Shown: piece after piece, positions 1 through 62,338 of the stretch
Position numbering within the stretch: the first letter of the stretch is position 1
How the letters are laid out: the number at the start of each line of letters is the position of its first letter
Assembly (NCBI GenBank): GCA_029953675.1
Contig: JAMWBK010000009.1
Location: 1,302,001 to 1,366,000, forward strand
Reading direction: 5' to 3'
Source of the DNA: Rhodosorus marinus CCMP1338
Taxonomy: Eukaryota > Plantae > Rhodophyta
DNA length: 64,000 nt
Translations under genes and position numbers: made by a program
The notes under the pieces: model-generated
The model's database searches: none
What the model saw: only the letters and a program-made list of their open reading frames with translations
What the model was told of the DNA's origin: nothing

Positions 1-2026
1 GCATGTCCATACGCGAGAGGAGCGAGTCAACTCTGTCGTTGAGAGCCGATAGAGCAACCGTCTCATCAAGTATGCGCCTTTCCCCAGTTCCCTGTTTAAT
101 TCCCACATCCAAACTCCTCAAGCGCTCTTCGAGAGAGTAGATAGCCCTGTCCTGCTCAGCTATCTGTTCTCCACAAAGACCAAGATCGAGGATTTTCAGA
201 TACTTGACGGGGCGGAACAGAGGTAATACTCGGGACAGTTTTGCCAACGTACCTTTGCGCTCTTCACATTCGCATCAGCTACAGCAGCGATGTACTTCTT
301 CTCCATCTCTAATCTCTGATTTTCAATCTCTTCGATCTTGGCTTCCATTTCCCTCACTCTGGACATCAGGGCTTCCTTGTCGCCTGCCGACTCCTTGGTT
401 GTGGTAGAGTGCGGTATCGAGGCCCCCGGAGAAGTTTGGGGAACCTCAGGACGCGACGGTGGTGGTTTGGAAGCCAACGGCAACATCGAGCTCACTCTCA
501 TCGACTGTGAATCATTCCCAGACTTGGTGGTAAGCAAACCTGGCACTCTGAATTGCTCGCTTCCGACAATCAGACGTGGACCTTGACCCACATGAAAAGC
601 AGGCATTGGCTTCTGGATGTCCATCTTGACGGGCTGGAGCTCTGGAAATTCAAAAACTGTAACATGGATGCAGGTTGGAGCGGCTTAGCAAACAACACCG
701 GTCGAAAGTTCCTTTTTTTGGCACTGACAGAGAGCGAAAATGTACCATCCTCTGGTGGGGTAACCGTCGCGGACCCGCTAGCATCGTATGCTTCACTCAC
801 GCTAGATTCTAGCCACGTCTCACGGACCACACCGCTGTCATAGCCACTCACGGCCAGCGCACCATTCCTGGACGAGCATAGAGAGCAATGATCAACGTGC
901 AATCTGGTGGTGTGATTACAGACCTCCGGACTAGGACAGTTGGACAGCACACTATCACTCACTTTGTCATTGCAACTGCCAATATAGCATCATCTCCCTT
1001 CTCAACAATCTTCTCAGTAAACGAGTGACCAGCCAGTCTCCATGATCGCATAGTGCCATCCGACGAACCCGAAATAGCAAGGTCTCCGGATCCATTCACT
1101 GCAACGGACCAGACGCGAAGCTCATGGCCTTGCATGACTAAACGAGTTCAACCACATACAGGGTAAAAATTCGAGCGGGGTAGGTGAGTTGTTTGGTCCT
1201 GGAAGACATGTTTGATGTGCAACCCTACTGCTTTCTTGTTTCAGATTGTTCAAATCCCAGAGTCGAACAGTCTTATCTCCACTGCAGCTAACAATTTTTG
1301 GATAAGATGGGCCGTCAGACAAGTCCACGGCGTGAACCCATCCCGTATGTCCTAGCAGGTTGTGAACCTTTTTTGTTGTTCGTTTCCGTCAGCGAAGCAG
1401 GCGTTTCAGCGCTATTTGATAGCAAATCCTCAAGCGTGGAGGGAACCTTTTGCCGAACTCACCTCTCGTGTCTTGGACGCTCTAATGTCCCACAATTTAA
1501 TAGCCTTATCACGACCTCCGGAAACGACGAGGTTTCCGCTGCTGACCTCATCAGAACTGGTTGCGACGGCAACGCACTTAACCCACCCTTTGTGTCCTTC
1601 GAGTTTTACGATCTGTTTCTGTGTCTCAACATCCCACAACCGCACACATTCATCCTTCCCGCTGGAAGCAACCACTCTCCCTTCGTCGGTACTTGAAATC
1701 CCGGTAATATCAAGCGCATCGTGTGCTGCCTTCAGCTCCCATTTCTTCTCCGCTTTGACTCCTCCATGATCATCGGAATTCAGCAAAAGTCTTGTGCAAC
1801 ACACAGATCCATGCGCGTCTCCTTCAAACAGCAGGTCTCTTCTGCCCAAGTCCAACGCAGATACCAAGGAACCATGAACACTCACCGTATGAAGTGCTCC
1901 GACATCACCTCCGACTTGATGAACCGCCACAACCCCAGATGCGCTTCCAGAAACAAAAAGGTCTTCGCTCGGAGACAGGCTGATGCACGAAACAGCAGCC
2001 CCTTCATGGCCACCAGAATTCGCCAT
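1..2026 (-). CDS. WD40-repeat protein with low-complexity and coiled-coil C-terminal region; multi-exon; 3' end runs off the left edge
   Basis: ATG at 2026 (MANSGGHEGAAV). Repeated GH...WD units: GKDECVRLWDV, LEGHKGWVKCVAV, GGRDKAIKLWDI, GHTGWVHAVDL, SGDKTVRLWDL, GHELRVWSVAV. Coiled-coil exon ALMSRVREMEAKIEEIENQRLEMEKK. The minus frame is still open at base 1. Confidence 0.85.
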
Positions 2027-2919
2027 GTCTGCAGTTTTTCGGGCGTTCACATAGACACGGCGGAGCGGATTGCCAAGTTGCCGTCTGCTTCAAAAGACAT
2101 CACATCGACAGAAAATCTGAATGTTTTGGTCGTACTGGGTCAAATTTCCTAGACCCAAAGGCCTCCTTGCCGATCCGAAATACCGAGTGCTCCCAGATTC
2201 GACCCTTCATCTAAACTCCTACTATAAGGGTCCCACCCCTCCTCACGCTTAAAAGCTACTCCGCCTCGTCCCTAGCCTTCTTCCATGCTGTCTCAACGAG
2301 ATTAACAGTAGCCTGGCAGATAAACCTATTAGGCTGCGGTATCGTAGATTTGCTGCTTTCGAATCTGGAGCTGTCCCTCCTGTTCTGGAGTTGTCATGCT
2401 CCGCTTGACTTGACCTGAGCGTAGGTGCATGCGCAGCAACGTGTGCTCGAGGTTCTTGGGACGAGTGCTGTAACGATGTCTAGTAGCGAATTGCATTTGT
2501 TCTTGATTTATGGGAACTCTACTGGGCGGCCAGGCTGTTGAGGTTACGTTCGCCTCGAAGTGCTGGCAAATGAGATGCAGCAATCTAAAACTGTTCACCG
2601 TGACAGAATCACTGGTTGGGGCATAAAGGTCAAATTATCAGGTTGTTTCCACATTCCCAGGATCGGGTCACCGCTTGCTCCAGTTTGCACGTTTCTTGCA
2701 GTAGGTTTTTTGGGCTCACGAGGGGGCTGATGGACTATCACACGGATATTTACATCCCTCTCGTTTGCCGCGCGGCGTACGAATCTTCAACCCCACGAGA
2801 TACGAGTCAGGGCCTACGAAACCGGTTCAGTTTTTAACTCGGCCCATGGGTTATTGTAAAAAGTTGCACTAGCTGATCCATAGTTAGAAGAACTTGCCCG
2901 CCAACGGGCACAGAGTACA

Positions 2920-7143: not shown

Positions 7144-8127
7144 TCAATATACATACTCTTGCACGTTCATCTCTCTGCCGAAAGCCTCAGATCCGTCGAT
7201 CTGCTCGTAGCTTCCAGAAAACGAGTGCATTGGGAGGACTACACTGTCCGGAAGAACCGCGGGAGAAGGAGCATTAACGACAATTGACTCCTTGCTCTCC
7301 ATCCTCTGGGGTGATTCACTTTCTTGCTGCGTTCTCGCAGGCGACAGCGACCCGTCGGGTACGTCCTCGATTCCGAACAGTTTTCCGTTGAAAACTTCCT
7401 CGATGTAGTTCCCATAATCGTCCCTCAACTTGAAAAACGTGAGCTCGGTTACGAGGCTGTCGCTTCCGGCCTGATGCATCTGACCATTCCTTTCAACCTT
7501 GTAGTGTGCAGCTAGTTTGTTCAGTCCACCCCGGAATCTTTCCTGCGCAATGTACTTCATGTCATATATATTAGGGAAGAACATTTTTACCACATCCAGA
7601 AAGCCTTCTCGGTCTTCTGGCATTGACTGGGACGTAACGGCCTTCAACAAGTAGGCGAAATCATAACAAGAGTGGAATGAAATCCACTTTACATTGTCAT
7701 TGAGGACGACCCCGGATGAAATGAGTTTCTCCCCGAAGTCTTCAACGTCAATTCCTTCCCTTTGGAACCTCTCAAAGTCAATTCCACTTCCAGTGAGCAG
7801 GTTAATTGAGTCTTGCGCGTACGTATCGCTATCGAGAAAAAACTTGAAGTTAAACTGCCAAGTGGATACGTCCGGGCACAAGTTTCCGGCTTCGTCGGCG
7901 AAGCTGAAGCCTATTTGAATAATCTTCAACATATCCACGTTCACCCTCAGCGTTTGATACCGCTGCTCAATTTGATTCTTGTAGTGGCCGACCGGCTCCG
8001 CCACGACACCGGGAAACTCAGTATCAATCGCGACATAAGGATAATCCTCCAAAACCTCCGCAATCTTAACAATTTCCTCTACCAAATTGTGACCCCATAC
8101 CTCAACAATTTTACCCTTGGGCGCCAT
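7144..8127 (-). CDS. CAF1: CCR4-NOT deadenylase subunit CAF1/POP2 (DEDD nuclease), single exon, 327 aa
   Basis: YPYVAIDTEFPGVV, LRVNVDMLKIIQIG, TWQFNFKF, DSINLLTGSGIDF, WISFHSCYDFAYL and HQAGSDSLVT are canonical CAF1 motifs. Confidence 0.97.
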   Translation of the reverse strand: MAPKGKIVEVWGHNLVEEIVKIAEVLEDYPYVAIDTEFPGVVAEPVGHYKNQIEQRYQTLRVNVDMLKIIQIGFSFADEAGNLCPDVSTWQFNFKFFLDSDTYAQDSINLLTGSGIDFERFQREGIDVEDFGEKLISSGVVLNDNVKWISFHSCYDFAYLLKAVTSQSMPEDREGFLDVVKMFFPNIYDMKYIAQERFRGGLNKLAAHYKVERNGQMHQAGSDSLVTELTFFKLRDDYGNYIEEVFNGKLFGIEDVPDGSLSPARTQQESESPQRMESKESIVVNAPSPAVLPDSVVLPMHSFSGSYEQIDGSEAFGREMNVQEYVY

Positions 8128-12038: not shown

Positions 12039-15000
12039 TTACTTGTTTTTGTGTTTGGTTAGCTTGATCTGTCCTCGTTTCTTATCATACTCAATCACAG
12101 TAACAACAATCTTGTCGTTTAGCTTCGGAAGCATCGATTCGATTTCCGACGTTGATCTTTGATCGGAGGGAACAATCTCCGAAATATGGAGGAGGCCGTG
12201 TCGACCAGGCATCACTTCTAAAAATACACCAAATTCGGCCACGCGAACAACCTTGCCCTCATACACAGAGCCGACCTCCACCTCCCCAATTAATTCATGC
12301 ACAAGCTTCCGAGCAGTTTTCAATGCGTCACTGTTCGGTGCGTGGATTTCCAGGTCGCCAACCTCGCTAATGAACAGCCTGGCTCCTGTGCCTTCATATA
12401 TTCTGTTGATCATCTCACCACCGTTACGAACTAGCAATGGCCGAAGAAGGGGCTCAACCTTTGATTCTGAAATTACGGGCGCAGCGGGTGAGAGCGTCTT
12501 CGCAGGTTCCGGAATACATTCCGACATGATCTTCAAAAGTTGAACTCTTCCTAGTCGAGCTTTCTCGAGTGCAGTGGGAGCCCAATTCAATGGTAATCCA
12601 CGAGGCAGCTTTACGTCCAACTGCAAAGCTGTAATTCCGTTCGCCGTCCCAGCCACCTTCAGATACAGACGAGAATGACAATGATTGGCAGAGTTAATGT
12701 CTCAACGCCTTCCAACGTCCGAGTGAAGCTATTCGGAGGGCCAGCCAAGGTGAAAGCTTGTTCTGGAGATTGCTCACCTTGAAATCCATGTCCCCGTAGT
12801 GGTCTTCGATCCCGAGAATGTCTGTGAGGAATATTGGGTTGATTTTCGATATGTCCGAATGTGTTTCAGGAGCGACAAGCCCGACAGAAATACCAGCGAC
12901 ATGCTTTGCAAGTGGAACACCAGCATGCATGAGAGCCATTGATCCGGCACATACAGTTGCCATGGAAGAGGAACCGTCGCTTCCCAAAACGTCAGCGTTC
13001 ACACGGACAACATGTCTGAAAGGCGTGTCTGACGGTCTCTTTCCTAATCGTTCGTTTCACATCGCGCATCTTCAGAGAGTACACTCAGAGAAGGCAAATC
13101 GCGTTTGAGCTCCTACCTATCAGAGAGTTGCCTGAGAAAATCTCAAAGGGGTCCAGTACGTCCTCCTCCGTCGGAACCATCCACGCGAGCGACTTCTCGG
13201 CGAGAGCCCCATGACCGATTTCCCGCCTATTTGCCTTCAGCCTCGTCCCGATTTCTCCGTTGCAGAAACTTGGAAAATCGTAATGCAAGAGGAATCGCTT
13301 GATCTTCTCCTGAGGGGCCAGGTACTGCTCCACCTTTTGAGCCTCTTGGGGGAGCCCCAAAGTTGTTACGGCAAGAACCTGTTCGGTACCACGGGTTAAG
13401 TCTACTTGAACCGGATAGTATATATCTTACTATCTAGAGCAAGAAAAAGCTGACGAAACCCAAGAGAAACCAAAACTAGCTCTTCTGCGGCTTTTCTGAT
13501 GAAAGACGTAGAGAGGGACATACCTGAGTATCACCTCGTTCAAAGAGCGCAGACCCATGCACGTCCCCGCCCAACAAACCAACCTCCGCACGGATCGAAC
13601 GAATGTCATCCAAGCCACGTCCATCGCAGCGAGTTTTCGTCTCTACAATAAGTTCCCGAAAGGCTTGTCTTGCGAAAGAATCGATCTTGGCATTCAGCTG
13701 AACTGGAGTGAAGTGGTCCGCTGCAATTTTCTTCAGGCGGTTTAACGTCCTACGGGTACATACGAAAAGCAGACAAGTGCTCAATCAGGCACCGCGGGGG
13801 TCAACGCACAGGGAGATTCCATCATACCTCCCAAACGCCCGACCGATGAGTTTCGCCCTGCCCTGCTTTCCTAGAGTTCGCGTGTTCCTAAACACATCCC
13901 TGAACTCCTGTACGGCCTGAACCGCGAATAAGTCGCCCGCTTCGTTCACTGGGCAAGGATCCGCGATTTCCTGGGTCTCGATCTTCTCGCTCTTCTGAGC
14001 AGAACACAAAACAGAGAGAAAGTTGTTCTAGCCCTGAGTTTCTTGCTAGCATTACTCTGATCCTGCCGGGAGTTGCGTTGCGATGTGAACGTACTTTATA
14101 TTTCTTCGCAAGTTCGAGCTGAGCTTCTATCACAGAGCCAATCTTTTCCTGAGCGCGCTCAAGTCCCTTGAAGAAAGTTCTTTCGTCGATTTCTGCTGCC
14201 TCGGCTTCCAGAGCCAAGATGTGTCCTTTAGTACCAGCGACAAGCATATTCAAGGTGCTGTTACGTAGTTGCTCGATGGAGGGATTCTCCACAAACTCGC
14301 CATCAACCATACCGAGTCTGACCGCTCCCACGGGACCTTGGCAACGAAATTCATCGGAAGATCAGACCCCGCACTTGTAGAGATGTATGCTCTCCGTCGT
14401 CCTTCTCACTACCTTTCCATTCAACGTGGGAGAGCAGAAGCGCCGCCGATGCTGCGTTTATGGACAACGCGTCCGCGTTGGATACAGAATCCGCGCTCAT
14501 TAGCGTACACGAAAGCTGGATCTGATCTGCGATGCCCTTTGGAAAAAGTGGCCTCAAGCTACGGTCGATTAAACGTCCAACTAACGTCTCCTTGTCGGAA
14601 GCTGTGCTCTCTCGCTTCCTGGCGTTAATAGGGATCATTCCCCGGGAAGCCGCTTTTTCTCTGTAGTCCAGCTGCGAAAGGATCCGCAGTCAGGGATCAT
14701 AGCTCGCTCAGATCAGAATTCTGCTTCCAAACTTACTTGCAAATTGGTCCCGGCATCTTGAAACTCCATGCCACCTTCTCTGCTTACCGCAACTGCAGCA
14801 AGAACTGAGTTCCCGCCAGAAGTGGCCACAACCGATCCTTCCGCAAGCCTAGCTATACGGCCTGCTTCCAACTTCACGCTTCTCCCTACGAATATTTTTC
14901 CCTTGCTTAGTGTGCATATTTACTACTTCGCCGGGCTCGTGTATTTCTGGCTCTGCGGATACTTACCGTCAACAGAAACCGGGAGAGACAACGCTGCTGG

Positions 15001-17513: not shown

Positions 17514-19132
17514 ATGAACGGGAAGGGGGCCTTCGTTGGAGGAAATGGGATCATCCAGGCTTTTAGAAGGAGGAGTATGGAAAACGGAAGTTCGGCGTGT
17601 GCTCAGATTCTGAGGATGGCAAGATCTCCTGTTCGGGAGGCTCAGAATGCTTTCGAAGGGTTTTCACCCGCAAACCGAGCAACCCTTGGGTCGGCTTGTA
17701 TTGGTGAGTTTTTTTGCGTCACAGCCGAGATTTGTTACCTCGTCAGTCCGTGTTCAAGCCTTAATGTTCTTTTTGTTGCCAACTGTTCCCAGGTGGAGCC
17801 GTGTACTACCCACTAAGGTCACGTCCAGTCATTGCCTCAACGGCGGCCATGTTTTGCTGCATTTGGAGCTACCTGATCTTGCGTTGGATCGTGTTTGCAT
17901 ACACCTTTGAGAAATCGCTTCTGGACGCGGAGGACCTCGCTGAGGAGGACAGTATTTTCGATATCGTCGATGGTATCAAAGTCCACTTTAGGAAGACTCT
18001 ACCGGTTGAGCAGTCTCCTGCGCAGTCTACAGAAGGAACAGTCCTATACCACGGGTTCGGGGCCTCGCTTTTCTCTTTCAGAGATGTCCAGCGAGAACTT
18101 GCCGATGCACTGGGAATGACGACTGTGAGTTTTGACTTCCCTGGTTTCGGATTGACGCAAAGACCGAGCGGGGGATTTTCCAACTACTCGCTACGCCGTA
18201 CAGCAAGAGTAGGAAACGAACTATCACGCCAGCAAGGCTTCGAGAAGGTCGTTCTTGTGGGCCACTCGATGGGAGCTTTCGCTGCTTGCATGGCAGCGGT
18301 TATGGAGCCCGAACGGATTCGGGCACTAGTCCTAATCTCACCGGCGGTACCCGTTGGGGATGCTAGGGTTCGCCAGGTAGGCTTGTGATACCCCAGCAAT
18401 ACCTGGCATTCACACGGGACCTTACCTTCCATCCCATTCGTTCGCTGTCAAACAGATGAGTAAGAATTGTTTGATCAGAAACATGATGCGACTAATTGCT
18501 GGCTTCCGAAGCATCGTTCTGCACATTCTCTGGTACTTCTTCTTTCCGCTGCTGGTTGCATTTGCGCGATCCAAAGTTTCCAAGAACGACTTTTGGAGAA
18601 GTGGCCTCGAATACGCTGCGTATGACAAGAAAAAGATAACCCCTAAAGTCGTTGACGGATATTCCAAGCCCACGAACGCGAAGGCTTGGGACTGGGGTGT
18701 AATCAGCTTCATTTGGGGTCAAATGGGTGCTCCGTTCTCGTCGAGGGTACGCAGATTCTCAAGTGACTGGGGTTTCTGCAATCCATACTGACACTTCATG
18801 TTCATGTTCAAAAATTAGGGATATTTGGACCGGTATTTCTACGATGAAATTGCTGAACGCGGAATACCGACTCTTGTAATTCATGGAGAGAATGACAGAG
18901 TAGTTCCTATTCGAATTGGTGAGAACGTGTCTAAGCGAATATCGTCCTCCCGGTACGTTGTCCGACCAAATTCCTCCCACAATGACGAACGTGGTTTTGC
19001 TCACGCGACATTGGGCTGTTATATCCGGTTAGGTTCGTGTCTATAAGATGTTGTGGCCACCTTCCGCAGGAGGAGGAACCACAGCAAGTTGTAGAAGAAG
19101 TTCGAAGCTTTTTGGCCGAATCATGTGTCTGA
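17514..19132 (+). CDS. Alpha/beta-hydrolase with N-terminal extension and hydrophobic segment; multi-exon
   Basis: LYHGFGASLFSF, SFDFPGFGLT, nucleophile elbow LVGHSMG, LVIHGENDRVVP and the spliced last exon CGHLPQEE (catalytic His). The N-terminal AFVGG resembles red-algal plastid transit peptides (inference). Confidence 0.9.
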
Positions 19133-19297: not shown

Positions 19298-20636
19298 TTA
19301 CGCTGGCTGACCACCTTCGAGTGGGACTTCAGTTGCGCCGTTTGGTACTGCAAGGTGAGGTTTAATTTAAATACGGTTGCTTGCTGTGCAGTCTATGCCT
19401 TTCCGAAAAAGTCAAAGATTATGGTGCATGGTGAAGGAACTATGCGTACCTGGTTGGTCGTCCTCTAGTTCTTGCAAGTAGTGCTCTACTTCGAGCGCTG
19501 ACATACAACCAGAGCCTGCTGCAGTGATTGCCTGTCGCCATTTCTTGTCTTGACAGTCGCCGCAGGCGAAGACACCCCGTACGTTTGTCGCTGTCGAATC
19601 CGGCTTTGTGATGATGTAGCCCTGATCATCGGTGTCCACTGCATGAGATACAAATTGTGTGTTCGGCAAATGGCCGATCGCAAAGAAAAGCCCGTTGCAG
19701 TCTATGATCCTCTCCTCCTCTGTCTTGAGATCCTTAATCTTCAGCTGCTCAAGCATTTTCCCGCTTCCAAGCGCCTCAGTCACAGCGTGAGAGTAGAGGA
19801 ACTCAATCTTCGGATTCGCGCGGGCTCTCTGCTGCATGGTCTTGGAGGCGCGAAGGACATCCCGCCGAACAACAATGTACACCTTTGAGCCGTACTTGGT
19901 CAGAAAAGTTGCCTCTTCCATAGCCGAATCTCCGCCACCGATAACAGTAAGCGGCTTGCCGCGGAAAAATGGCGCAGCACCGTCACACACCGCACACGCA
20001 CTTACACCCCGTTGCCAAAAACCGTTATCACCAGCGCCGGGGATATCCATTCTCTTCGCAGTCGCGCCAGAGGCGATCACAAGAGCCTTGGCCTGTGCCA
20101 CCGTGCCGTTCTCTGATGTCACCGTGTACGGAAAGGAACCAAAATCTACAGTGGAAATCGTTTCCGTGAGTATTCGGGTCCCCATGTTGACCGACTGTGC
20201 CCTGAATCGTTCAGTAATTTCCATTCCGGATACTCCTTCTGGAAAGCCCGGAAAGTTCTCCACATCGGTAGTTGTGGTCAGCTGCCCTCCAGCTGCGACG
20301 CCCCCGGCAAGCAGACCTGTGATTCCGGAGGCAAAAGAGGTGTTCGCAATCACCACCAACACCCTAGTTCATACAAGTACCCACTTCGGTTCAGATCGTG
20401 ACTCACCTTCAAACAGCAAAGGCTTTAGCTCTGCTCGAGCTGTATAGATCGCTGCTGTATGTGCCGCTGGTCCACTGCCTATCCAGACACACACAAGAAC
20501 AAGATGCTCAGAAATCAAATCTCTGAAACCGAAGATAAAGACGCAAAAGAAAAAGCAACAAAACAGATAAACCCAGGACGAAAAAGTCCTCACCAACAAT
20601 AATAACATTCTCCACCTTAGGCTCCTCCTCCGCCAT
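19298..20636 (-). CDS. NTR: NADPH-dependent thioredoxin reductase (low-MW TrxB/NTRA type); multi-exon
   Basis: VIIVG|[36 protein letters not shown], active site [29 protein letters not shown] and [15 protein letters not shown] last intron from 19449 gives a stop at 19298; the unspliced frame stops at 19412. Confidence 0.96.
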
Positions 20637-28739: not shown

Positions 28740-31700
28740 ATGGACGAGCTCAAGAGTCTTCGGGAGTTGAACGTCGTGTCCAAAGTATGCCAAGAACTTG
28801 ATAATCACTTGGGCATGTCGGACAAGACGATGGCCGAGTTTTTGATCGACCTTGTGGGGAAGAACAAATCACTTGGAGAGTTCAGAGCAGCGCTATCTAA
28901 ATTTGGAGGAGGGGAACAGTTGTTGCCAGATGCGCTGGCGGAGTCTGTTCATCGTCTAGTTCAAAAGTTGACAACTGCACCTGGAAATGCAGGGCAGGAG
29001 AAGAAACCAAGGGCCGCGGCGAAAGCTGTAAAGAAGCAATCAGATCCCAAAACGGAAGCCATCGCAGCACGATTTCCAGGTTTGGCTACGGAAGACCACC
29101 GGCACGGGAGTGACTCGGAAGAGGGGGATGAAAAAGGGGGTTTTCTGGGTTCGGGAATCAATGCCGATACAGTACTCTCGAAGGTTGAGAAGGAAGAGGT
29201 TGAGGCTTCAAATACTGGAAAAAGGAGGGAGAGGTCAGTCGAAAGAGATGAGCGACCATGGGGTCGGGACTCCGCGAGACGTGGAGATGATCGCAGACGT
29301 GACGACGATCGCAGACGTGGAGATGATCGCAGACGTGACGACGATCGCAGACGTGGAGATGATCGCAGACGATATGATCGCGAACGCAGCGATGACCGCA
29401 GATATGACAATGATCACAGGGGAAATTCGAGAGTTGATCCCGAACGTGCTCGTCGAGAAGTTCAGCATCACGTCGGAAAGCCCCAAATCGAAGTTGGTAA
29501 GGTGTACCGGGGCAAGGTCACCAACGTCCGGGATTTCGGGTGCTTTGTAGGTTTGGAAGATGTTGGTTACCGAAGAGGAGAAAGACCTCCGGAGGGACTA
29601 CTGCATGTTTCGGAAATGGGGCTTACTAGCCGGGTTGCTAACGCTAACGAAGTCTATAAAAGGGGAGAGACTTTGTACGTCAGGGTCAATTCTCATGCCG
29701 GGAAGAGAATAGGCCTGAGCGCAAAGGACATTGATCAAGAGACAGGAGAAGACAAGAGACCTCAGAAACCGAACCGTCCTGTACATGATGGTGGAGACTC
29801 GAGAAGGAATAATCGCTCCAATCCGGAAATAGGTGACATGCAGTCTGTTTCTGGGATTCCCCGGTCTTTACAGGAGGAGGATTCTTCCAGAAGGTCTAAG
29901 GGTCGAGCACGGCGCCGACTTCCTTCTCCAGAGCAGTGGGAGCTTAACCAGCTGGCGAGCGCGGGAGTTTTACCACTAGCTGATCTCCGAAAACAGGCAG
30001 GAATCGCGGAGGACTCCGAGGAAGAGGAAGCAGGGGTTCTAAACGATGTCGAGGAGCCTGAAGAGGAGTTGGAAATCGAATTAAATGAAGACGAGCCTGC
30101 TTTTCTGCAGGGTCAAGCTACAAGCAAGGCCCAGCCTCTATCTCCCGTAAGGATTGTGAAGAATCCCGATGGATCAATGCAGCGAGCGGCTATGACTCAG
30201 AGCGCTTTGTCGAAGGAACGAAGAGAGCTGCGAGATCAACAGGCGCAAGCAAATGTAGACGATGTACCCGCAGACCTCAACAGAGCGTGGGAGGATCCGG
30301 TCCCCGATCAAGGAGACCGACACATCGCTCAAGAACTGAGAGGCTTGGGCACGGGTCCCGCAGAAATGGCGGAGTGGAAGAAGAAAGCGATGGGGACGGC
30401 CCCGAGTTTTGGATTCAGTCAAAAGCGCGACCAGAGCATCATTCAACAGCGGGAAAGTTTGCCCATCTACAAGCTTAAGGATTCATTGCTAGATGCCTTC
30501 GCCTCCAACCAGGTTCTGATCGTTATTGGAGAGACAGGGTCTGGCAAAACCACGCAGATGACTCAGTATCTCGTGGATGCGAATTATCACAGAGCTGGGA
30601 GAATTGGCTGCACACAACCTCGTCGTGTTGCTGCAATGTCCGTTGCCAAACGTGTCGCGGAAGAGTTTGGGTGTCGGCTGGGCGAGCAAGTGGGATACGC
30701 CATCCGTTTTGAGGATTGTACCTCTAATGAGACCATCATCAAGTACATGACCGATGGAATGCTTCTGCGAGAAGCACTATTGGATCCCGATCTGAAACAA
30801 TATTCCGTGATTATGTTAGATGAAGCTCACGAGCGAACCATTTCGACCGACGTACTGTTTGGCCTTCTGAAGGATTGTTTGGCCAAGCGCAGTGATTTGA
30901 AGTTGATAGTCACGTCCGCAACTCTGGATGCTGAAAAATTTTCTTCATATTTCTTCAACTGTCCGATTTTCACGATCCCCGGAAGAACGTTCCCAGTTGA
31001 GATCCTGTACTCAAAGGAGCCAGAAGCCGACTACCTTGATGCAGCGTTGGTTACAGTGATGCAAATTCATCTGACAGAGCCGCCTGGAGATGTTCTTTTA
31101 TTTCTCACGGGTCAGGAGGAAATCGATACATCTGCTGAAATCCTTTATGAGCGGATGAAGTCTTTGGGCCCGAATGTTCCGGAGCTGATTATCCTACCGG
31201 TCTATTCTGCACTGCCTTCGGAAATGCAAACGCGCATATTCGAGCCAGCACCGGCAGGGCAACGAAAAGTGGTTATCGCCACCAATATCGCTGAGGCTTC
31301 CTTGACTATCGATGGTATCTTTTACGTGGTGGATCCAGGTTTCGCAAAGCAGAAAGTCTACAACCCAAAGCTGGGAATGGATTCTCTGGTGGTTGCTCCG
31401 GTTTCACAGGCGTCCGCGAGGCAGAGGGCAGGGCGAGCAGGCAGAACTGGTCCTGGAAAGTGCTTTCGTTTATACACCGAACAGGCGTATCGGAACGAAA
31501 TGCTCCCGACGTCGGTACCCGAGCTCCAGAGGAGCAACCTCGCTAATACAGTGCTCACCTTGAAGGCGATGGGAATCAATGACCTCTTGCACTTTGATTT
31601 CATGGATGCCCCTCCCGCGCAGCACATGGTTTCTGCTATGGAGAGCTTGTACTCGTTAGGCGCCTTGGACGAAGAAGGATTGCTCACACGGCTTGGGAGA

Positions 31701-32426
31701 AAAATGGCTGAGTTCCCGCTCGAGCCAATGCTTTCGAAGATGCTTCTTGCCAGTGTCGACTTGAAGTGCTCCGATGAAGTCCTCACGATCGTTGCAATGA
31801 TATCCGTACAGAACGTCTTCTACAGGCCCAAGGAAAAGCAGGCCCAAGCTGACCAGAAGAAGGCGAAATTCCACCAACCGGAGGGTGATCATTTGACCCT
31901 TCTAGCAGTCTACGATGCCTGGAAGGCGAACCGATTCTCCAACCCCTGGTGCTACGAGAACTTTGTACAAAGCAGAAGCTTGAAGCGGGCTCAAGACATT
32001 CGAAAGCAGCTGATAACAATCATGGATAGGTACCGACTAGATATTACGTCGGCTGGAAGGAACTACATGAAGATCCGTAAGGCGATTGTTTCCGGATTTT
32101 TCGTTCACGCGGCTAAAAAGGACCCCCAGGAAGGCTACCGAACGCTTGTAGAAGGACAACCTGTGTATATTCATCCGTCATCGTCCTTGTTCCATATTCA
32201 GCCGGAGTGGGTAATCTATCATGAGGTTGTGCACACCACGAAGGAGTACATGCGAGAAGTCCTTGCGGTTGAGTCCAAGTGGTTGGTGGAGCTGGCACCT
32301 CGCTTCTTCAAAAGTTCGGATCCGAATAGGCTATCTCGACGCAAGAGACAGGAGAAAATCGAGCCCCTGTTCGACAAGTATGCTCAAAACCAGAAGGAGT
32401 GGCGTCTGTCGAAGCGCAGAAGATAA
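28740..32426 (+). CDS. DHX8: DEAH-box spliceosomal RNA helicase DHX8/PRP22, single exon, 1228 aa
   Basis: N-terminal [16 protein letters not shown]-type segment, RD/RS region, S1 domain, [63 protein letters not shown]2 and OB-NTP regions. Confidence 0.98.
29280..29369 (+). repeat. Coding tandem repeat, five 18-nt units alternating A-B-A-B-A ([12 protein letters not shown]) in DHX8
   Basis: CGTGGAGATGATCGCAGA alternates with CGTGACGACGATCGCAGA. Confidence 0.95.
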
Positions 32427-56573: not shown

Positions 56574-59500
56574 TTAACCAATCCCCGGATTTGGGGTGTT
56601 TCCGTGGTTTGACCGGGAGTTCGCTAGCTTTGCTCGATTTTCGTGGTTTTGAACTCTCGAATACCCACCGGTATTCGCCGGCGTCTCATCCTCTGCGGGG
56701 TTTGGTCCCGCCGCTTCCGCTTGGGATGCATTTACCAGCATAGCAATTGCTCCACCTACAGGGGATTTGGAAGGAATCGGATGATAGCTACCATTTCCAG
56801 AAGGATGAGAAGCAATCGCCTCCCCGGTCGTACGCGTCACATCAGACGATGCCAGCACACCTCCAGCAGCTAGGGTCACAGGACCTGTAGAAGATTTGCA
56901 TGTCGCTTTGGGAGGAAATTCGCTCTCGGTCCTAGGCTTGGAAGGTCCCAAGTTCTCCTGAAGAACAGGTGGCGTGCTAGTGCTCGGAGCCAGGGTAAGT
57001 GGCACCACTTTAGTTCCCGTGACAGCATTGGCCACACTCTCTGATGATTGCATAACAGCTTTCCCCCGCAATCGGGAATCGGTACCAGTGTGGCCCGTTA
57101 GCACTGGAACTGTTGAAGGTTTACCACCGTTTGAACGCGCCTCATGCACCCCAGCATCTGCAGTCGTTATAGTGGGCACTTCAGGTCCCTTCTCGAAAGC
57201 CCCTACGACAGCAACAGTCTTTTGTGCGGGAAGAATAACACCAAGAGGGATTTGTTCGCTCCTTGACTTCACCGTTTTCGAATCCTCGGCCGTGCGCTCC
57301 GAAGCGACCGTGGGAACCTTGACAAGAACCTGCTCACTTTTCCTTTCAATCGGATTCATTTTCGCAGTATCCACGGCTCCGTCCGAATGGAGGTTGACAG
57401 CAAGTCGCTCAGTTTTCGACTCGGACGTAGACGCGTCCGCAGCTGCACAGAGTTGATTGTCTTCACTGTTGGGTTCGGTTTTCTCCAGATGATGCTTGGC
57501 ACTTCTTGATTGACCCTTTTTCTCCAGCTGAGAGAAAATATCACAAGTAGAACATGTTAGTTCGATGCGACACACTTCACAAACGAGGGAATATCTCTCG
57601 CAGACATACCACATGAGACCGAAGTCTTATAGCAAACTCGCTCTTTAGGAGATTCTTCATATCCGCCGACTCTATCTGCGACAAGACGAACATAGCTACA
57701 TCCAGGACATCGGATTCTTTGTTCGACAGCATGTGGAAGTACTGGTAGCTGAGAAGGTCGATCTATTGAGAACGCAAGGGGAAAAATTGTTGTCAGTCTG
57801 ATAATCTAGATAGGCAAGGCGTTCGTCCAGCTCTAGCATCCTGGAATATTCTAAGTGTGGGAATTGTATGCTTGAACCTACGACTGTTCGATACGTGAGG
57901 TCACTAGCATGCATTTCTGTGTTGAGTATGAAGAGCCGGGAGGATATTTCAAACCTTCTTCTTGTACTTCCAAACGCCCATCTGGAACAAAACTAATGTT
58001 AGTCCAACCAAACTTTTCGGCGTTTTGTATCCTGCTGATATGTATCAATACCTGTAGTCGTTCGCTGGTCTTTGTAACCTGTACCATGCGCCAAGAGCGC
58101 TCTTCACCCACAGAGAAGGATCCGACCCGTAGTCTATGCACCACTCGGTTACTCTATGTATTTCGATCATCTGTGGAAGGGAATCAGACCACGACGGAGG
58201 AACCAAAATTCCCTCCGCGACGATCGCAGTATCAGGGTTCTTGTCAAGGTACTCGAGCTTCGCTGTCTCTCCGCGCGCTCCGATAAAGCGAAATCTATCG
58301 AGAACTCGGTTGGGAGTCTGCCCACAAGAAGAAGCGTGCGATGAGTGAATCGCAAGAGTAACAAATTTCCCCGCAATGAAGAGGCAGGGTGGATTCAGCT
58401 TTCTTACCTCATTGTCGTATGAATGTGCGTATTCCTCGATGTTTTCTAGGTCGCCCTCAGGAACTATCCTCGATGTCCTTGCGGAGAACTGTGCTTCCAA
58501 CAAAGCCATGTTCACCTCGCCGCCGTCGCGGTAATTCGTAAGCCTTCTTGAAGATTCCCGTTGTGGCCGCATGGATGCTGCTGTGGGCAAGACCCCTGTA
58601 GTACTTTTTGCTCGCCTGAGGTACTTCAACTCCCGGTCGCGTGCCCGCTCAGCTTGCTGCAGGACTGATCGCCGTTGATGTCGCTCCTCCTCAAGCTCTT
58701 CTTCCTGCTCGCGCTGTTACCATTTGATGTAAGAGAAAAAAACAACCTGATTAGTTTCTAGTCCAACCATGCAATCGATGCTACCTTCGCTTTGCCCGTA
58801 GCTTCTGACCCAGAACCTTGGCCTAGCTAGATTGAATTGCTCAGCCCCTACCATGCTCCTCTGCACTTGCCGCTCTTCCTCGCGCTTCTTCTCCAATGCA
58901 CTTATCCTCGCCGATCGTTTACCATAAGCATGGTGCTGCTCTATCTCAGTTGCAATTACTCTATCCTGCTTCTCCCTTTCACGGTTTGCCCGTCTCCGAA
59001 CTTCCTCCCACTCGACTTTCAATTCGCTAGTTAGTCTGTTCACTAATGACTTCTCAGTTGGATTTTTCACTACGAAAGCAAACACGTTGTTCCCATAAAA
59101 AAGCACAGGAGCTTGAGCAAACCTTGTTCTCGTCTGTCCGGAGCTGTGCTAACTTTGCTTCGGAGCTCACCATTTCCAAGTGAGTCAACGAACTCTAAGA
59201 GAGAGCCAACCCCATCTGCGACAAGCTCCCACTTCGAGCAGGGCACACGGTCTTGAGCGTCCGTGGCTGAAGCTTTGTCCTCCTCGGCAATCTCTGCCCT
59301 CTCGCCTTCAGAAAATTCCGACCTATCTCGTACCTCGAGATCCAGCGCTCCTTCCTCTTCATCTTGCTCAGATGCCATTGAAGCCCTTGTCCTCCTGCGA
59401 GTACTCACCTAAGGGATCCAGGATAGTTTCAACGACACATCTCAGCACCAATATTGACACATAAGAAAAGATTACCGGAACGTATTGAACTTAAGAACAA

Positions 59501-60637
59501 CAAAGTCGTGCAAACCCCACCCTCCTTGATGGGGTACTCCTTTTTCTTTTTCTCTCCCTTTCCTCGGCGTTTTTGGAGCGCCGCTCTTCTCGCTCCTTTT
59601 GCCTCCTCATTTTCTCCTGGTAGTCCAGATCCGGCTCCCGGTAAAGTCTACTATGATCCCCAAAATACCTTGATTCAAAGCAAAAAGACGTGCACGTGCA
59701 TGAGAATAAATCGGGTGCGGCCGACGATGGGACACTGCTCGCTAGCCTAAACGATACCAGTATGTTGTCATATCTGCGTCATATCCGTATGGCAGGAGGC
59801 GTAGCACATCGGAATCTAAACTCCTGACCTCCTCGCCAACCCGACCATCAAGCTCCGAAAGTTGCTTTTCCAATAGAGCATGAAGGATTTTGCACCTCAG
59901 CTCAGCATCCAGTTTTACGTAGGTTCGCAAGTCCTTGAATCGCTAGATATCAAGGAAAGATTGGAGGGCATGAGAAAAATGTACGTCAAAATAGCTGCTC
60001 CATAGTGCAGTTCACTCTGACGAGTGAATCTTACCAAACCGTCGTCCAGTTCCTCGAAGCCATACGCGGCCCTTGCAGAAGGTCGTGCCAAACTGACTCG
60101 ATCTGGGTTAAACAGGAAGCTGAACGATGTGGGGTTACTTCGAGCGATAGATTTAACTTTGTTGATCCACCTGTTGAAAGATGCTGGTCCTAATCCAAGG
60201 ATTCGGGCATGGATCTCTTCCAGCACCCCTAAGTTTTCATCGGCGTTCATCAAGTATTCCTCTAAGGCAGCAGGTTGTACTTCAGATATGTTCAATCCTG
60301 CGAGACTGAATATGTGCAGCAAACGCCAGGCCGCAGGAAATTCCCACATGGATTGCAAACCTTGCAATACCGTTTCTTTTGGATCCCCAATCTCCGCTTC
60401 AGGCTTGCTCGTTGACTCCGAAGGTACAACTTCTTCCGGCCCATCAGACCGATTCCCACCATTCATTTGAGACTCGTCTACAGCCCCATCCGATTTGACA
60501 GCTTCCTCAACCCCACCTACGCCTTTAGCGTCCTCGTTGTTCGCAGGTTTCTCGCTTTCCGACAACTTCGTTGCTTTCTCTGCGTCTTCATTTGTATCAG
60601 TCAGCTCAGCTGAGGCGACAGCAGCCGCCTCGCCCAT
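56574..60637 (-). CDS. DDT-WHIM1-WSD chromatin protein (DDR4/CECR2-like ISWI partner) with an RFTS (DNMT1-RFD) domain and low-complexity C-terminus; multi-exon; both ends uncertain
   Basis: DDT: LQSMWEFPAAWRLLHIF. WHIM1: YVKLDAELRCKILHALLE. WSD: PYGYDADMTTYW|YFGDHSRLYRE and KWELVAD. RFTS-like: PNRVLDRFRF...AEGILVP...VTEWCIDYGSDPSLWVKSALGAWYRLQRPANDY|RWAF. GTAAG-type donors upstream suggest a spliced 5' UTR or more exons. Confidence 0.8.
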
Positions 60638-62338
60638 CTCTAACCCAAGGAGAACCACAGACGACTCCAATTCAGCAAACATGAACTCACTAACGGAACC
60701 AGTCGAGCCACGGCGTGGATCTACTGCAAACAAAACCGAATCCTGAACTAAACTTACAAAAACAAACGAAAAACAGACGAATCCATACTGGAAAACGAGG
60801 GGGCACAGGCCTCACTCCCAAGCAAAAACAAATTTCACATCCTAAAACACATCAACGCAGATACCCCTAAAAGTCGAACTGTACGAATCCAGACTTGATA
60901 CTTACATCTACGGCCCTTTGGCAAAAGCCAAGCAGATGCTTGCAAAAACAAAAACGACCACCCTCTCCTCGCAGAGACACCGACCCACCCCCCACTTCTC
61001 TTTTCAGTCTACATACAAAATTCAAGTCCCGGTACAATTCTCCCCGACTGATCTCCCTGAGGAGTGACACAACCAATCCGCCTCGTTTTCAAAGGTGGAA
61101 CAGAGGCTTCGGAACTCCTCCCTTCTCACCCTTCCCACAAACCCAAAAAACCACTTTCCAATAACACGGAAAACTCACACCCGAATGAAATCCTCAATTT
61201 CATAGAATTACACCTACCAACCCACCACCCTCCCCAACCCATCCAAAATTATCCCTCTTCCCCGAAATGCTCCAAACCACCTACAAAAACCCTCGCTCGT
61301 TATATCCCTTCTGTCGAAATCCTTTTTTCCAAAAAATGAAAGAAAATACCAAGTCCGTAAACGAGCTGTTACAGTCTCATGATTCCACGAGCAAAACCCC
61401 CCGTAACCCCACACACCATCACTTTGGTTCACTCCCTCGGCCAAGACGCAATTTACGGCTTTCTATCATCCGCACAGCATTAGAGCCTGCGACCACGACT
61501 ATTGTCGTGAAGGAGACCCCTTTTCTTCCTACGAAAAAAGGTTGCTTCCCTTGTTTTCCTTTTCATTTTTTTTATGGTTTTGACTTTTTACGTTTTTCTT
61601 CAAGAGGGGAAAGAATTCGCACGCGTTTCTTTCAAATTTCTAATTTATTTCATAGCAGCTAAATGGGAGTTGATTTAGAACTACCCGCTTTACGACGGTT
61701 CTCTACCGACGACAGGAAAAGCAAGAGGAACTCGGCGTACGAAAAAATATATTTTCTTCTTCAAAATTATGTTATTCAATAAATGCATAGGTGAGGTTCG
61801 CGAACCAGGGGCTCCAAGTGGACGCCCAAAGACGTCCCGCGAGGGTTATATGGAGAGGTACTATGTTCCAGATCTGCACTATTTTAGCAGAAATATGCTC
61901 AGTTTCTCGGATTTAGGGTCGGTACTATGGTAAAGTAGACGTCTGGATGGTGGTGCTATACTTATTGCAAATACGTTAATTGTATTCAATAAACATTCGC
62001 ACTGGCAATCCCACAGAGGGGTAGGAGGCACAAGAGTTTTCCAGTATTTCATCTTATAAAACTAATCTGCTCCATAATGAGCCATTCTCCAACAAAAGGT
62101 ACCCGGTGGATACCTTGATGTTAAAACAACGGACCAAATGCTCAGCGGTTAGGCCGGATAAGTTGACAGACTGTCCAGTATTGGATGCTACTGAGAGGCT
62201 TAGTCCGCTGGTCGTTGGGGGGCGGGGGGAGCCGTCAGCCGTTGGCAAGTTCTTGACTACTTCAATGCCTGCCGAAGCGCCTGAGGTACGATCTTGGTGT
62301 AAGGATTTACTTCGAACTACGTTCGTGATGTGGTGAGA

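What the first reader, a model, noticed from the sequence alone, without database searches (positions are those of the whole stretch)
56574..60637. DDT-WHIM1-WSD ISWI adaptor fused to an RFTS domain
The N-terminal half has the DDT, WHIM1 and WSD motifs of ISWI-partner subunits (plant DDR4, animal CECR2/RSF1). At about 58317-57630, in the same spliced frame, there is an RFTS-like domain (EWCIDYG...LWVKS...AWYRLQRP..Y). RFTS is known from DNMT1/MET1, where it reads ubiquitylated and K9-methylated H3, and from S. pombe Raf2. There is no methyltransferase domain here, and no bromodomain or PHD as in the animal proteins. I do not know this combination as a described architecture. It would couple nucleosome spacing by ISWI directly to a heterochromatin or replication mark, making it the best candidate for an undescribed system in the window.
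Basis: partly seen in the sequence, partly recalled or inferred. Interest (0 to 1): 0.72.

Follow-up and report, generated by a model that had tools for sequence, protein, structure and literature searches.

The report
Red-algal DDT-WHIM remodeller adaptor with RFTS
This is a real ten-exon gene of the red alga Rhodosorus marinus for a protein that joins the helical module normally used to partner ISWI nucleosome-sliding motors to an RFTS domain otherwise known from the maintenance DNA methyltransferase DNMT1. The same fusion is conserved across red algae, and the three red algae surveyed for DNMT1 and its helper UHRF1 in a published study had neither.

Summary
A GT-AG, 10-exon minus-strand gene (60637..56574) encodes a 1056-aa protein identical to NCBI hypothetical protein NDN08_006867 of Rhodosorus marinus. 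It is 83% identical over its full length to a complete transcriptome ORF from another strain, so both halves lie on one transcript.

The RFTS domain is solid: Pfam DNMT1-RFD E 6e-9 (above cut-off); family profile against Arabidopsis MET1 E 3e-20; AlphaFold model against the DNMT1 RFTS crystal structure E 6e-9, TM 0.67.

The DDT, WHIM1 and WSD blocks fall below Pfam thresholds. Each aligns colinearly by profile-profile comparison with CECR2-type DDT-WSD-bromodomain proteins (97%, 99% and 96% probability). No methyltransferase, BAH, bromodomain or PHD domain is present.

The fusion is not unique. About 32 sequence clusters share it, and every named one is a red alga, from Cyanidiophyceae to Florideophyceae. 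All are labelled only "hypothetical" or "RFTS domain-containing", and I found no paper describing them.

A published survey of three red algae found no DNMT1 or UHRF1. C. merolae also lacks a SUVH-type enzyme and measurable 5mC.

Best reading: a CECR2-like ISWI accessory subunit whose bromodomain position is taken by an RFTS targeting module. ISWI binding and the RFTS ligand are inferred, not shown. This is a new variant of a known kind.

The parts
56574..60637 (-). Whole coding region: 10 exons, 1056 aa, stop codon included. Exons: 60637-60035, 59942-59758, 59668-59521, 59408-59171, 59069-58852, 58713-58408, 58317-58052, 57981-57882, 57762-57610, 57527-56574.
   Evidence: All introns are GT..AG, 70-138 nt. 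The protein is identical to NCBI NDN08_006867 and colinear with MMETSP ORF P0002.
60638..60682 (-). Alternative upstream in-frame start (ATG 60682-60680), used by the NCBI model. It adds 15 aa (MFAELESSVVLLGLE).
   Evidence: P0001 begins 15 aa before my model. The transcript ORF P0002 begins at the 60637 ATG.
60374..60637 (-). Acidic N-terminal tail, aa 1-88, poorly conserved.
   Evidence: 70% identity between the two Rhodosorus strains against 93-96% in the domains. Mostly absent from other family members.
60182..60373 (-). DDT-like helical domain, aa 89-152 (LQSMWEFPAAWRLLHIFSLAGLN...LEEIHARILGL).
   Evidence: hhalign against CECR2-type proteins: 97.1%, E 5e-11, 56 columns, onto the stretch that Pfam calls DDT in P0069. 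Model pLDDT 84-94. The Pfam DDT model itself is below threshold.
59626..59939 (-). WHIM1 motif, aa 203-277, spanning intron 2 (...KLDAELRCKILHALLE...LRLLPYGYDADMTTYWYFGDHSRLYREP).
   Evidence: hhalign 99.2%, E 1.8e-19, 75 columns, 39% identity to the CECR2-type consensus. Pfam WHIM1 only E 0.19. The D, Y.YF.D and YRE residues are nearly invariant in the family.
59241..59625 (-). Charged linker, aa 278-368, with a conserved basic motif (family consensus WAPRVA..R.TRAS; here RRVSTRRRTRAS).
   Evidence: Family consensus. Low pLDDT. Function unknown.
58888..59240 (-). WSD (WHIM2) motif, aa 369-452, spanning intron 4 (CSKWELVADGVGSLLEFVDSL...EKSLVNRLTSEL...GKRSARISALE).
   Evidence: hhalign 95.7%, E 8.8e-9, 44 columns. 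Pfam WSD hits 4 of 33 family members, best 2.5e-5. Family-invariant columns W387, L397 and L415 of P0001 (= aa 372, 382 and 400 of the 1056-aa model) lie here.
58591..59058 (-). Long charged helix or coiled coil, aa 396-505, running from the WSD towards the RFTS. Spans introns 4-5.
   Evidence: The AF2 model has continuous helices over residues 311-419 of the 661-aa construct.
57510..58443 (-). RFTS domain, aa 555-745: beta-barrel N-lobe plus helical C-lobe. Encoded by the end of exon 6, exons 7-9 and the first six codons of exon 10.
   Evidence: Pfam DNMT1-RFD E 6.3e-9 on aa 566-691. All 33 family members hit it, best 8.7e-17. Family profile against Arabidopsis MET1 chains E 3e-20. Foldseek to DNMT1 RFTS 6pzv_C E 5.6e-9, TM 0.67, with 5wvo, 5ydr and 3epz next. 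pLDDT about 90-97.
58318..58407 (-). Intron 6: 90 nt, in frame, no stop codon. Retention would insert 30 aa at the N-terminal edge of the RFTS domain.
   Evidence: Both readings stay open. The transcript ORF P0002 and the NCBI model both lack the 30 aa.
56577..57509 (-). Low-complexity Ser/Thr/Pro/Ala-rich C-terminal tail, aa 746-1056, with no recognisable domain.
   Evidence: No Pfam hit. 60% identity between strains and 12% across the family.

Best explanation
The gene encodes a chromatin protein of a family conserved across red algae. Its N-terminal half is a CECR2-type DDT-WHIM1-WSD helical module. In animals, fungi and plants this module is the part of accessory subunits that binds an ISWI-type ATPase and linker DNA. 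Its C-terminal folded domain is a bilobed RFTS domain, placed after a long helix where CECR2-type relatives carry a bromodomain.

The most likely working model is an ISWI accessory subunit in which the RFTS acts as the targeting module. The RFTS would bring nucleosome sliding or spacing activity to chromatin, or to a partner protein, that it recognises.

Shown here: the gene structure, the single transcript, the domain composition and order, the fold of the RFTS, and the conservation across Rhodophyta.

Inferred: binding to ISWI (from homology of the DDT-WHIM module) and a targeting role for the RFTS (by analogy with DNMT1 and Raf2).

The ligand is unknown. It is unlikely to be the canonical UHRF1-made H3 ubiquitin or a SUV39-made H3K9me3 mark, at least in Cyanidiophyceae.
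For: Gene and transcript:
- 10 GT-AG exons.
- Identical to the NCBI protein and colinear with a complete transcriptome ORF from a second strain.
- The Porphyridium purpureum orthologue is one uninterrupted 3318-nt ORF.

RFTS:
- Pfam hit above cut-off.
- 33 of 33 family members hit DNMT1-RFD.
- Family profile against Arabidopsis MET1 structures, E 3e-20.
- AF2 model with pLDDT above 90 matches DNMT1 RFTS crystal structures over about 200-220 residues, E 5.6e-9, TM 0.67.

DDT-WHIM-WSD:
- phmmer hits of the N-terminal half are proteins with DDT, KIAA2026_hel, WSD and bromodomain.
- The bromodomain of one of them (P0069) is most similar to human CECR2.
- hhalign of the whole module: 99.9%, E 4e-36.
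- Each block separately and colinearly: 97.1%, 99.2% and 95.7%.

Conservation:
- About 32 clusters at 50% identity.
- Named members come from Galdieria, Cyanidium, Cyanidioschyzon, Porphyridium, Chondrus, Eucheuma and Agarophyton.
- Domains are 93-96% identical between the two Rhodosorus strains, against 60-70% in the tails.

The link from DDT/WHIM1 to ISWI is established knowledge, restated in PMC10538959.
Against: - No experiment or co-occurrence test links this protein to ISWI. I could not check that Rhodosorus encodes an ISWI ATPase.
- The Pfam DDT, WHIM1 and WSD models do not reach their thresholds on this protein or on the family consensus.
- Only 2-4 of 33 members give E < 0.01 for those models.
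- Foldseek found no solved structure matching the N-terminal module; Ioc3, for example, was absent from the hit list.
- Sequence search of the PDB found nothing for the N-terminal module.
- WHIM-containing proteins such as plant MBD9 also work with SWR1, so the partner need not be ISWI alone.
- The family RFTS has no conserved Cys/His cluster. It is therefore not a close copy of the mammalian DNMT1 RFTS, which by my recollection holds a zinc site.
Confidence: 0.6

Rival explanations
1. The RFTS is a reader of a ubiquitylated and/or methylated histone tail at replicated or repressed chromatin, as in DNMT1. The protein would then couple nucleosome spacing directly to such a mark. It is a more specific version of the best explanation rather than an alternative to it.
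For: The best structural matches are DNMT1 RFTS domains crystallised with ubiquitin, H3K9me3 and ubiquitylated H3 (6pzv, 5wvo, 5ydr). Both lobes are modelled with high confidence.
Against: No DNMT1 or UHRF1 was detected in the three red algae surveyed. C. merolae has no KYP/SUVH homologue, and its 5mC is at background. Mammalian DNMT1 was not reached by the family profile at E <= 1, so ligand-contacting residues cannot be assumed conserved.
Confidence: 0.25
2. The RFTS is a protein-protein docking module, as in fission-yeast Raf2 where it binds Cul4. The protein would then bridge a remodeller to a cullin ligase or another complex rather than reading a histone mark.
For: [quoted passage not shown] Red algae likewise keep the RFTS without DNMT1. 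The RFTS has been shuffled onto several other chromatin scaffolds: bromodomain, PHD and ARID. The bromodomain and PHD scaffolds are confirmed in red algae; the ARID one comes from an unidentified organism.
Against: I made no sequence or structure comparison with Raf2. No partner is known.
Confidence: 0.3
3. The DDT-WHIM module does not recruit ISWI. The protein belongs to another chromatin complex (SWR1-like, as plant MBD9 does in part) or acts alone as a DNA or nucleosome binder.
For: The module is too divergent for the Pfam thresholds. MBD9-type WHIM proteins bridge SWR1 and ISWI. One phmmer hit to the N-terminal half has the FYRN/FYRC plus WSD make-up of MBD9-like proteins.
Against: Strong colinear similarity to CECR2-type proteins across all three blocks. 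DDT/WHIM proteins studied so far bind ISWI.
Confidence: 0.12
4. The architecture is an artefact of gene prediction: two neighbouring genes fused.
For: The gene has nine introns and a long low-complexity linker. One intron (58407-58318) is in frame and open.
Against: A complete transcriptome ORF from another strain spans both halves with the same junctions. Porphyridium encodes the whole architecture in one uninterrupted ORF. About 32 relatives carry both halves.
Confidence: 0.02

Closest known systems
CECR2 (CERF complex subunit) and CECR2-type DDT-WSD-bromodomain proteins
   Same: N-terminal DDT, WHIM1 and WSD blocks in the same order. hhalign gives 99.9% and E 4e-36 overall, and 97%, 99% and 96% for the blocks. 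These proteins are the best non-rhodophyte hits to the N-terminal half.
   Different: No bromodomain. An RFTS domain follows the WSD helix instead. Long charged linkers are present. The Pfam DDT and WSD models are not reached.
RFTS (DNMT1-RFD, PF12047) of DNMT1 / plant MET1
   Same: Pfam hit above cut-off. Bilobed fold superposes on DNMT1 RFTS structures. The family profile hits both RFTS copies of Arabidopsis MET1.
   Different: No BAH or C5-methyltransferase domain. No conserved Cys/His cluster. The protein is present in red algae in which DNMT1 and UHRF1 were not detected.
Fission-yeast Raf2 (CLRC subunit)
   Same: An RFTS domain outside a DNA methyltransferase, in an organism without DNMT1. 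There it is a protein-interaction module.
   Different: Raf2 is not described as having a DDT-WHIM module. No direct comparison was made here.
Plant DDR1-3 (zf-4CXXC_R1 + DDT + WHIM1 ISWI partners)
   Same: A DDT-WHIM ISWI-partner scaffold fused to a module whose namesake works in maintenance DNA methylation (CDCA7-type zinc finger there, RFTS here).
   Different: A different added domain and a different domain order. zf-4CXXC_R1 proteins were not found in red algae.
Other RFTS chromatin proteins found here
   Same: Closely related RFTS domains, up to about 44% identity. The set comprises RFTS-bromodomain (Porphyridium P0041), RFTS-WHIM1-WSD-PHD (Galdieria P0064 and P0124-127) and RFTS-DDT-ARID (P0085, organism unknown).
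   Different: In these the RFTS is N-terminal and the partner domains differ. In the window's family the RFTS is C-terminal to DDT-WHIM1-WSD.

Membership tests
DDT/WHIM accessory subunits of ISWI remodellers (BAZ, CECR2, Itc1/Ioc3, plant DDT proteins) | DDT domain | tested here: met
   Met by profile-profile comparison only: 97.1%, E 5e-11, onto the Pfam-DDT stretch of CECR2-type proteins. The Pfam DDT model itself gives no hit on the protein, E 0.11 on the family consensus, and E < 0.01 in 2 of 33 members.
DDT/WHIM accessory subunits of ISWI remodellers | WHIM1 motif, including the conserved G.D..G..YW.F....RLY.E signature | tested here: met
   hhalign 99.2%, E 1.8e-19, 39% identity. The signature is visible in the sequence (GYDADMTTYWYFGDHSRLYRE). 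Pfam WHIM1 is only E 0.19.
DDT/WHIM accessory subunits of ISWI remodellers | WSD (WHIM2) motif C-terminal to WHIM1 | tested here: met
   hhalign 95.7%, E 8.8e-9, colinear. Pfam WSD hits 4 of 33 members, best 2.5e-5.
DDT/WHIM accessory subunits of ISWI remodellers | Fold like the solved Ioc3 DDT-WHIM module | tested here: inconclusive
   The model is confident for this region (pLDDT 84-95). Foldseek reported only RFTS matches, and no DDT-WHIM structure appeared among the hits at E <= 10.
DDT/WHIM accessory subunits of ISWI remodellers | Physical association with an ISWI ATPase | not testable with these tools
   Needs IP-MS or pull-down.
CECR2 orthologues | Bromodomain C-terminal to the DDT-WHIM module | tested here: not met
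   No bromodomain at E <= 1 and none in 33 family members.
RFTS / DNMT1-RFD domain (PF12047) | Match to the curated profile above the gathering score | tested here: met
   36.4 bits against a cut-off of 22, E 6.3e-9. Family consensus 62.5 bits. 33 of 33 members match.
RFTS / DNMT1-RFD domain (PF12047) | Bilobed fold: beta-barrel N-lobe plus helical C-lobe | tested here: met
   Foldseek to 6pzv_C E 5.6e-9, TM(target) 0.67 over 204 columns; also 5wvo, 5ydr, 3epz, 3av4 and MET1 9v4o.
RFTS / DNMT1-RFD domain (PF12047) | Zinc site of the mammalian DNMT1 RFTS N-lobe (Cys3His; recalled from the literature, not checked here) | tested here: not met
   Only one column of the family RFTS is mostly Cys, and it lies in the C-lobe helix. 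There is no Cys/His cluster.
RFTS / DNMT1-RFD domain (PF12047) | Binding of ubiquitin or ubiquitylated and methylated H3 | not testable with these tools
   Needs binding assays or a structure-based residue comparison.
DNMT1 / MET1 maintenance methyltransferases | BAH domains and a C5 DNA methyltransferase domain | tested here: not met
   No such Pfam hit in the protein or in any of the 33 family members.
Plant DDR1-3 | zf-4CXXC_R1 zinc finger next to DDT-WHIM1 | tested here: not met
   No Pfam hit. The literature reports no zf-4CXXC_R1 proteins in red algae.
INCENP (the label carried by the C. merolae orthologue, 'similar to inner centromere protein') | INCENP-specific domain (IN-box / ARK-binding region) | tested here: not met
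   No INCENP family among the Pfam hits of the 33 members, which include the representative of the C. merolae cluster, P0034. My guess, not tested, is that the label reflects the charged coiled coil.

The most novel reading that the evidence does not exclude
Red algae may keep the RFTS as a free-standing chromatin-targeting module although DNMT1 and UHRF1 were not detected in the three species surveyed. They have grafted it onto at least three scaffolds: DDT-WHIM-WSD, bromodomain and WHIM-PHD. A fourth, DDT-ARID, comes from an unidentified organism.

In this protein the RFTS would read a replication-coupled or repressive mark, for example a histone or PAF15-like ubiquitylation made by a non-UHRF1 ligase. 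That would load an ISWI remodeller so that nucleosome spacing, or H3K27me3-type silent chromatin, is restored behind the fork. This would be a DNA-methylation-independent function of the RFTS, possibly its ancestral one.
Probability: 0.2. Interest if true: 0.8.

Novelty: new variant of a known kind. Interest (0 to 1): 0.55.

Why it matters
RFTS biology is understood almost entirely through DNMT1, where it handles autoinhibition and reads UHRF1-made ubiquitin marks, plus one fungal case (Raf2). Here the same fold is attached to the module that normally partners ISWI remodellers.

The family spans more than a billion years of red-algal divergence. DNMT1, UHRF1 and CDCA7-type zinc fingers were not detected in the three red algae surveyed. 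In C. merolae, SUVH enzymes are absent and 5mC is at background.

That gives a clean setting for asking what an RFTS does without DNA methylation, and how ISWI-type remodellers are targeted in a lineage whose silent chromatin is Polycomb-based. C. merolae has an orthologue and is genetically tractable.

The case also shows that database labels hide the architecture. Only the RFTS half is annotated, because the DDT, WHIM1 and WSD blocks lie below Pfam thresholds.

Tried and rejected
- AlphaFold on the single sequence gave a useless model (mean pLDDT 46). It was repeated with a 37-sequence alignment.
- The word-indexed homologue search with the single protein and with the family alignment returned only the two Rhodosorus proteins, probably because low-complexity words filled the candidate list. 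The exhaustive phmmer search found the family.
- PDB sequence search with the protein found nothing. With the family profile it found only MET1 for the RFTS part and nothing for the N-terminal module.
- Foldseek gave no match for the DDT-WHIM module.
- Scanning the family consensus against Pfam did not lift DDT, WHIM1 or WSD above threshold.
- A possible inflation of the hhalign score by charged linkers was checked by aligning the three blocks separately. All three held.
- The gene-fusion artefact was rejected.
- The 'inner centromere protein' label of the C. merolae orthologue was rejected.
- The organisms behind P0079, P0081 and P0085 could not be identified. They are Logan assemblies or not on record.
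- The key survey of WHIM architectures (Aravind and Iyer 2012, PMC3272235) is not held, so I could not check whether it mentions an RFD-WHIM combination.
- Literature searches for ISWI in red algae gave nothing usable.


Full report
**What is in the sequence.** The region 56574-60637 on the minus strand holds a split gene. From the six-frame translation and the DNA I built a 10-exon model with canonical GT..AG introns of 70-138 nt. It encodes 1056 aa.

The word-indexed protein search returned two proteins. The first is NCBI hypothetical protein NDN08_006867 of the unicellular red alga Rhodosorus marinus (P0001). It is 100% identical and starts 15 codons upstream, at 60682. The second is an MMETSP transcriptome ORF marked 'complete' (P0002, 1034 aa), 83% identical over the whole length.

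The three-way alignment shows that the transcript uses every junction of my model. That includes the weak GTGGGG donor of intron 3 and the removal of the in-frame, stop-free 90-nt intron 6. The window is therefore nuclear DNA of Rhodosorus marinus, and the two halves of the protein are on one message.

**RFTS half.** The evidence comes from four sources:
- Pfam gives DNMT1-RFD at aa 566-691, with E 6.3e-9 and 36.4 bits against a cut-off of 22.
- A profile of 33 family members hits the Arabidopsis MET1 chains in the PDB at E 3e-20, matching both of their RFTS copies.
- An AlphaFold2 model made with a 37-sequence alignment has pLDDT of about 90-97 over this domain.
- In a Foldseek search of the PDB, the best matches are DNMT1 RFTS domains: 6pzv_C at E 5.6e-9 and TM 0.67 over 204 columns, then 5wvo, 5ydr and 3epz, then full-length DNMT1 and MET1.

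The domain is bilobed and spans aa 555-745 (window 58443-57510). The family has no conserved Cys/His cluster in it. It therefore lacks the zinc site that I recall for mammalian DNMT1. That is a recollection, not something tested against a DNMT1 sequence.

**DDT-WHIM1-WSD half.** This is the weaker part of the observation at the level of curated profiles:
- On the Rhodosorus protein, Pfam gives only WHIM1 at E 0.19.
- Among 33 relatives, only 2 reach E < 0.01 for DDT, 4 for WSD and 2 for KIAA2026_hel.
- The family consensus reaches only E 0.11 for DDT.

The homology is nevertheless clear by other routes:
- In the exhaustive phmmer search, the hits that match only the N-terminal half (E 1.7e-7 to 1e-3) are mostly proteins with DDT, KIAA2026_hel, WSD and a bromodomain.
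- The bromodomain of one of them (P0069) is most similar to human CECR2 (3nxb, E 2e-30).
- hhalign of the family's N-terminal region against an alignment of those proteins gives 99.9% probability, E 4e-36, over 336 columns.

The charged linkers could inflate that last score, so I repeated the comparison block by block. DDT gave 97.1% (E 5e-11), WHIM1 gave 99.2% (E 1.8e-19, 39% identity) and WSD gave 95.7% (E 8.8e-9). All three aligned in the same order as in the templates and onto the stretches Pfam labels there.

No solved structure matched this module. The fold-level test is therefore inconclusive.

**What is absent.** There is no methyltransferase, BAH, bromodomain, PHD or zf-4CXXC_R1 hit in the protein or in the family.

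**The family.** phmmer against 1.84 billion representatives found 101 proteins at E <= 1e-3. About 32 of these are full-length relatives (E 1e-59 to 1e-24, 690-1380 aa) matched in two to four stretches covering both halves.

The alignment shows conserved DDT, WHIM1, WSD and RFTS blocks separated by variable charged linkers. Every relative that carries a name is a red alga:
- Galdieria phlegrea
- Cyanidium caldarium
- Cyanidioschyzon merolae (XP_005538950, mislabelled 'similar to inner centromere protein')
- Porphyridium purpureum
- Chondrus crispus
- Eucheuma denticulatum
- Agarophyton chilense

With Rhodosorus, that covers Cyanidiophyceae, Stylonematophyceae, Porphyridiophyceae and Florideophyceae. 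The Porphyridium gene is a single uninterrupted ORF, so the fusion does not depend on any splicing model.

Between the two Rhodosorus strains the four blocks are 93-96% identical, while the N- and C-terminal tails are 70% and 60%. Selection therefore acts on the domains.

**Context that changes the interpretation.**
- The survey of Funabiki and colleagues (PMC10538959) lists DNMT1, UHRF1 and all zf-4CXXC_R1 classes as not detected in its three red algae: Gracilariopsis, Galdieria and C. merolae. Only a DNMT3-like gene is listed, in the two Cyanidiophyceae.
- Hisanaga et al. (bioRxiv 10.1101/2022.10.24.513474) report that C. merolae has no KYP/SUVH-type enzyme. Its nuclear 5mC is at background, and transposons are silenced by PRC2 and H3K27me3.

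C. merolae has an orthologue of this protein. The RFTS is therefore conserved where the canonical DNMT1 ligands (UHRF1-made H3 or PAF15 ubiquitin, SUV39-made H3K9me3) are unlikely to exist. This matches the situation of fission-yeast Raf2, whose RFTS is a Cul4-binding module (PMC4121317).

Whether Rhodosorus itself has DNMT1 or UHRF1 was not testable here.

**Other RFTS proteins.** The phmmer hits to the RFTS half are not DNA methyltransferases. No DNA_methylase or BAH hit appears among 39 of them. They fall into these groups:
- Sixteen are RFTS-bromodomain proteins. One of them (P0041) lies in the same Porphyridium purpureum assembly as the family member.
- Galdieria species carry an RFTS-WHIM1-WSD-PHD protein with NSD-type PHD fingers (P0064, P0124-127).
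- Two proteins from unidentified organisms are RFTS-DDT-ARID (P0085) and RFTS...WSD (P0081).

Their RFTS domains are up to about 44% identical to those of the family. In red algae the RFTS thus behaves as a mobile chromatin module, and it is paired with WHIM-type scaffolds more than once.

**Most likely mechanism.** By homology, the DDT-WHIM1-WSD module is the part of accessory subunits that binds the ISWI ATPase and linker DNA. This is established for BAZ, CECR2, Ioc3 and plant DDT proteins and is restated.

In this family a long helix leads from the WSD to an RFTS. That is the position where CECR2-type relatives carry their acetyl-lysine-reading bromodomain. I therefore read the protein as a CECR2-like ISWI accessory subunit in which the RFTS supplies targeting.

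What is shown: gene, transcript, domains, order, fold and conservation. What is inferred: ISWI binding and a targeting role. What is unknown: the ligand.

My confidence in the architecture is above 0.95. My confidence in the ISWI-adaptor model is about 0.6. Within that model, a histone or ubiquitin reader (about 0.25) and a protein-docking role (about 0.3) are roughly equally open.

**Comparison with known systems and novelty.** The protein works like a CECR2/BAZ-type accessory subunit. It is not a CECR2 orthologue in the strict sense, because it has no bromodomain. It contains a bona fide RFTS but is not a DNMT1/MET1.

The nearest conceptual parallel is plant DDR1-3. There the DDT-WHIM scaffold carries a CDCA7-type zinc finger, another module borrowed from the DNA-methylation maintenance toolkit.

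I found no paper in the searchable library that joins RFTS with DDT/WHIM or with red algae. The one survey most likely to mention it was not available. Public databases label the proteins only as hypothetical or 'RFTS domain-containing'.

I rate this as a new variant of a known kind. It is of moderate interest, mainly because it offers a DNMT1-free setting, with a tractable model alga, for asking what an RFTS domain does.

Noticed in passing
window 58318-58407 (minus strand): Intron 6 is 90 nt, in frame and free of stop codons. Retaining it would insert 30 aa (VRKLNPPCLFIAGKFVTLAIHSSHASSCGQ) at the N-terminal edge of the RFTS domain. The transcriptome ORF and the NCBI model both splice it out.
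   Followed up: partly
window 60638-60682 (minus strand): The NCBI model starts at an upstream in-frame ATG (60682), adding 15 aa. The MMETSP ORF from the other strain starts at the ATG at 60637. The true start is undecided.
   Followed up: partly
window 59241-59625 (aa 278-368); family alignments A2 and A4: A basic motif between WHIM1 and WSD is conserved across the family (consensus WAPRVA..R.TRAS; here RRVSTRRRTRAS), inside an otherwise variable charged linker. Its function is unknown.
   Followed up: no
P0041 (locus L003; Porphyridium purpureum GCA_008690995.1, VRMN01000001.1) and P0040-P0062: A second family of small RFTS-bromodomain proteins (about 350-760 aa). Its RFTS is closely related to the one in the window's protein. 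At least one member is from the red alga Porphyridium.
   Followed up: partly
P0064 and P0124-P0127 (Galdieria spp.); P0085 (L001); P0081 (L002); P0079: Further RFTS/WHIM combinations with the RFTS at the N-terminus: RFTS-WHIM1-WSD-PHD with NSD-type PHD fingers in Galdieria, and RFTS-DDT-ARID and RFTS...WSD in unidentified organisms (Logan assemblies).
   Followed up: partly
P0113 / XP_005538950 (Cyanidioschyzon merolae orthologue): It is annotated 'similar to inner centromere protein'. No INCENP domain was found in the family scan. My guess, not tested, is that the label comes from the charged coiled coil.
   Followed up: partly
window 28740-32426 (+): A single 1228-aa ORF with S1, DEAD/Helicase_C, HA2 and OB_NTP_bind domains. 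This is a DHX8/Prp22-type DEAH-box splicing helicase, apparently without introns.
   Followed up: no
window 7144-8127 (-), 19412-20362 (-), 1430-2050 (-), 12039-12656 (-), 17801-18388 (+): ORF fragments of ordinary nuclear genes: a CAF1 family ribonuclease, a pyridine nucleotide-disulphide oxidoreductase, a WD40 repeat protein, an S1 RNA-binding domain protein and an alpha/beta hydrolase. Nothing links them functionally to the finding.
   Followed up: no
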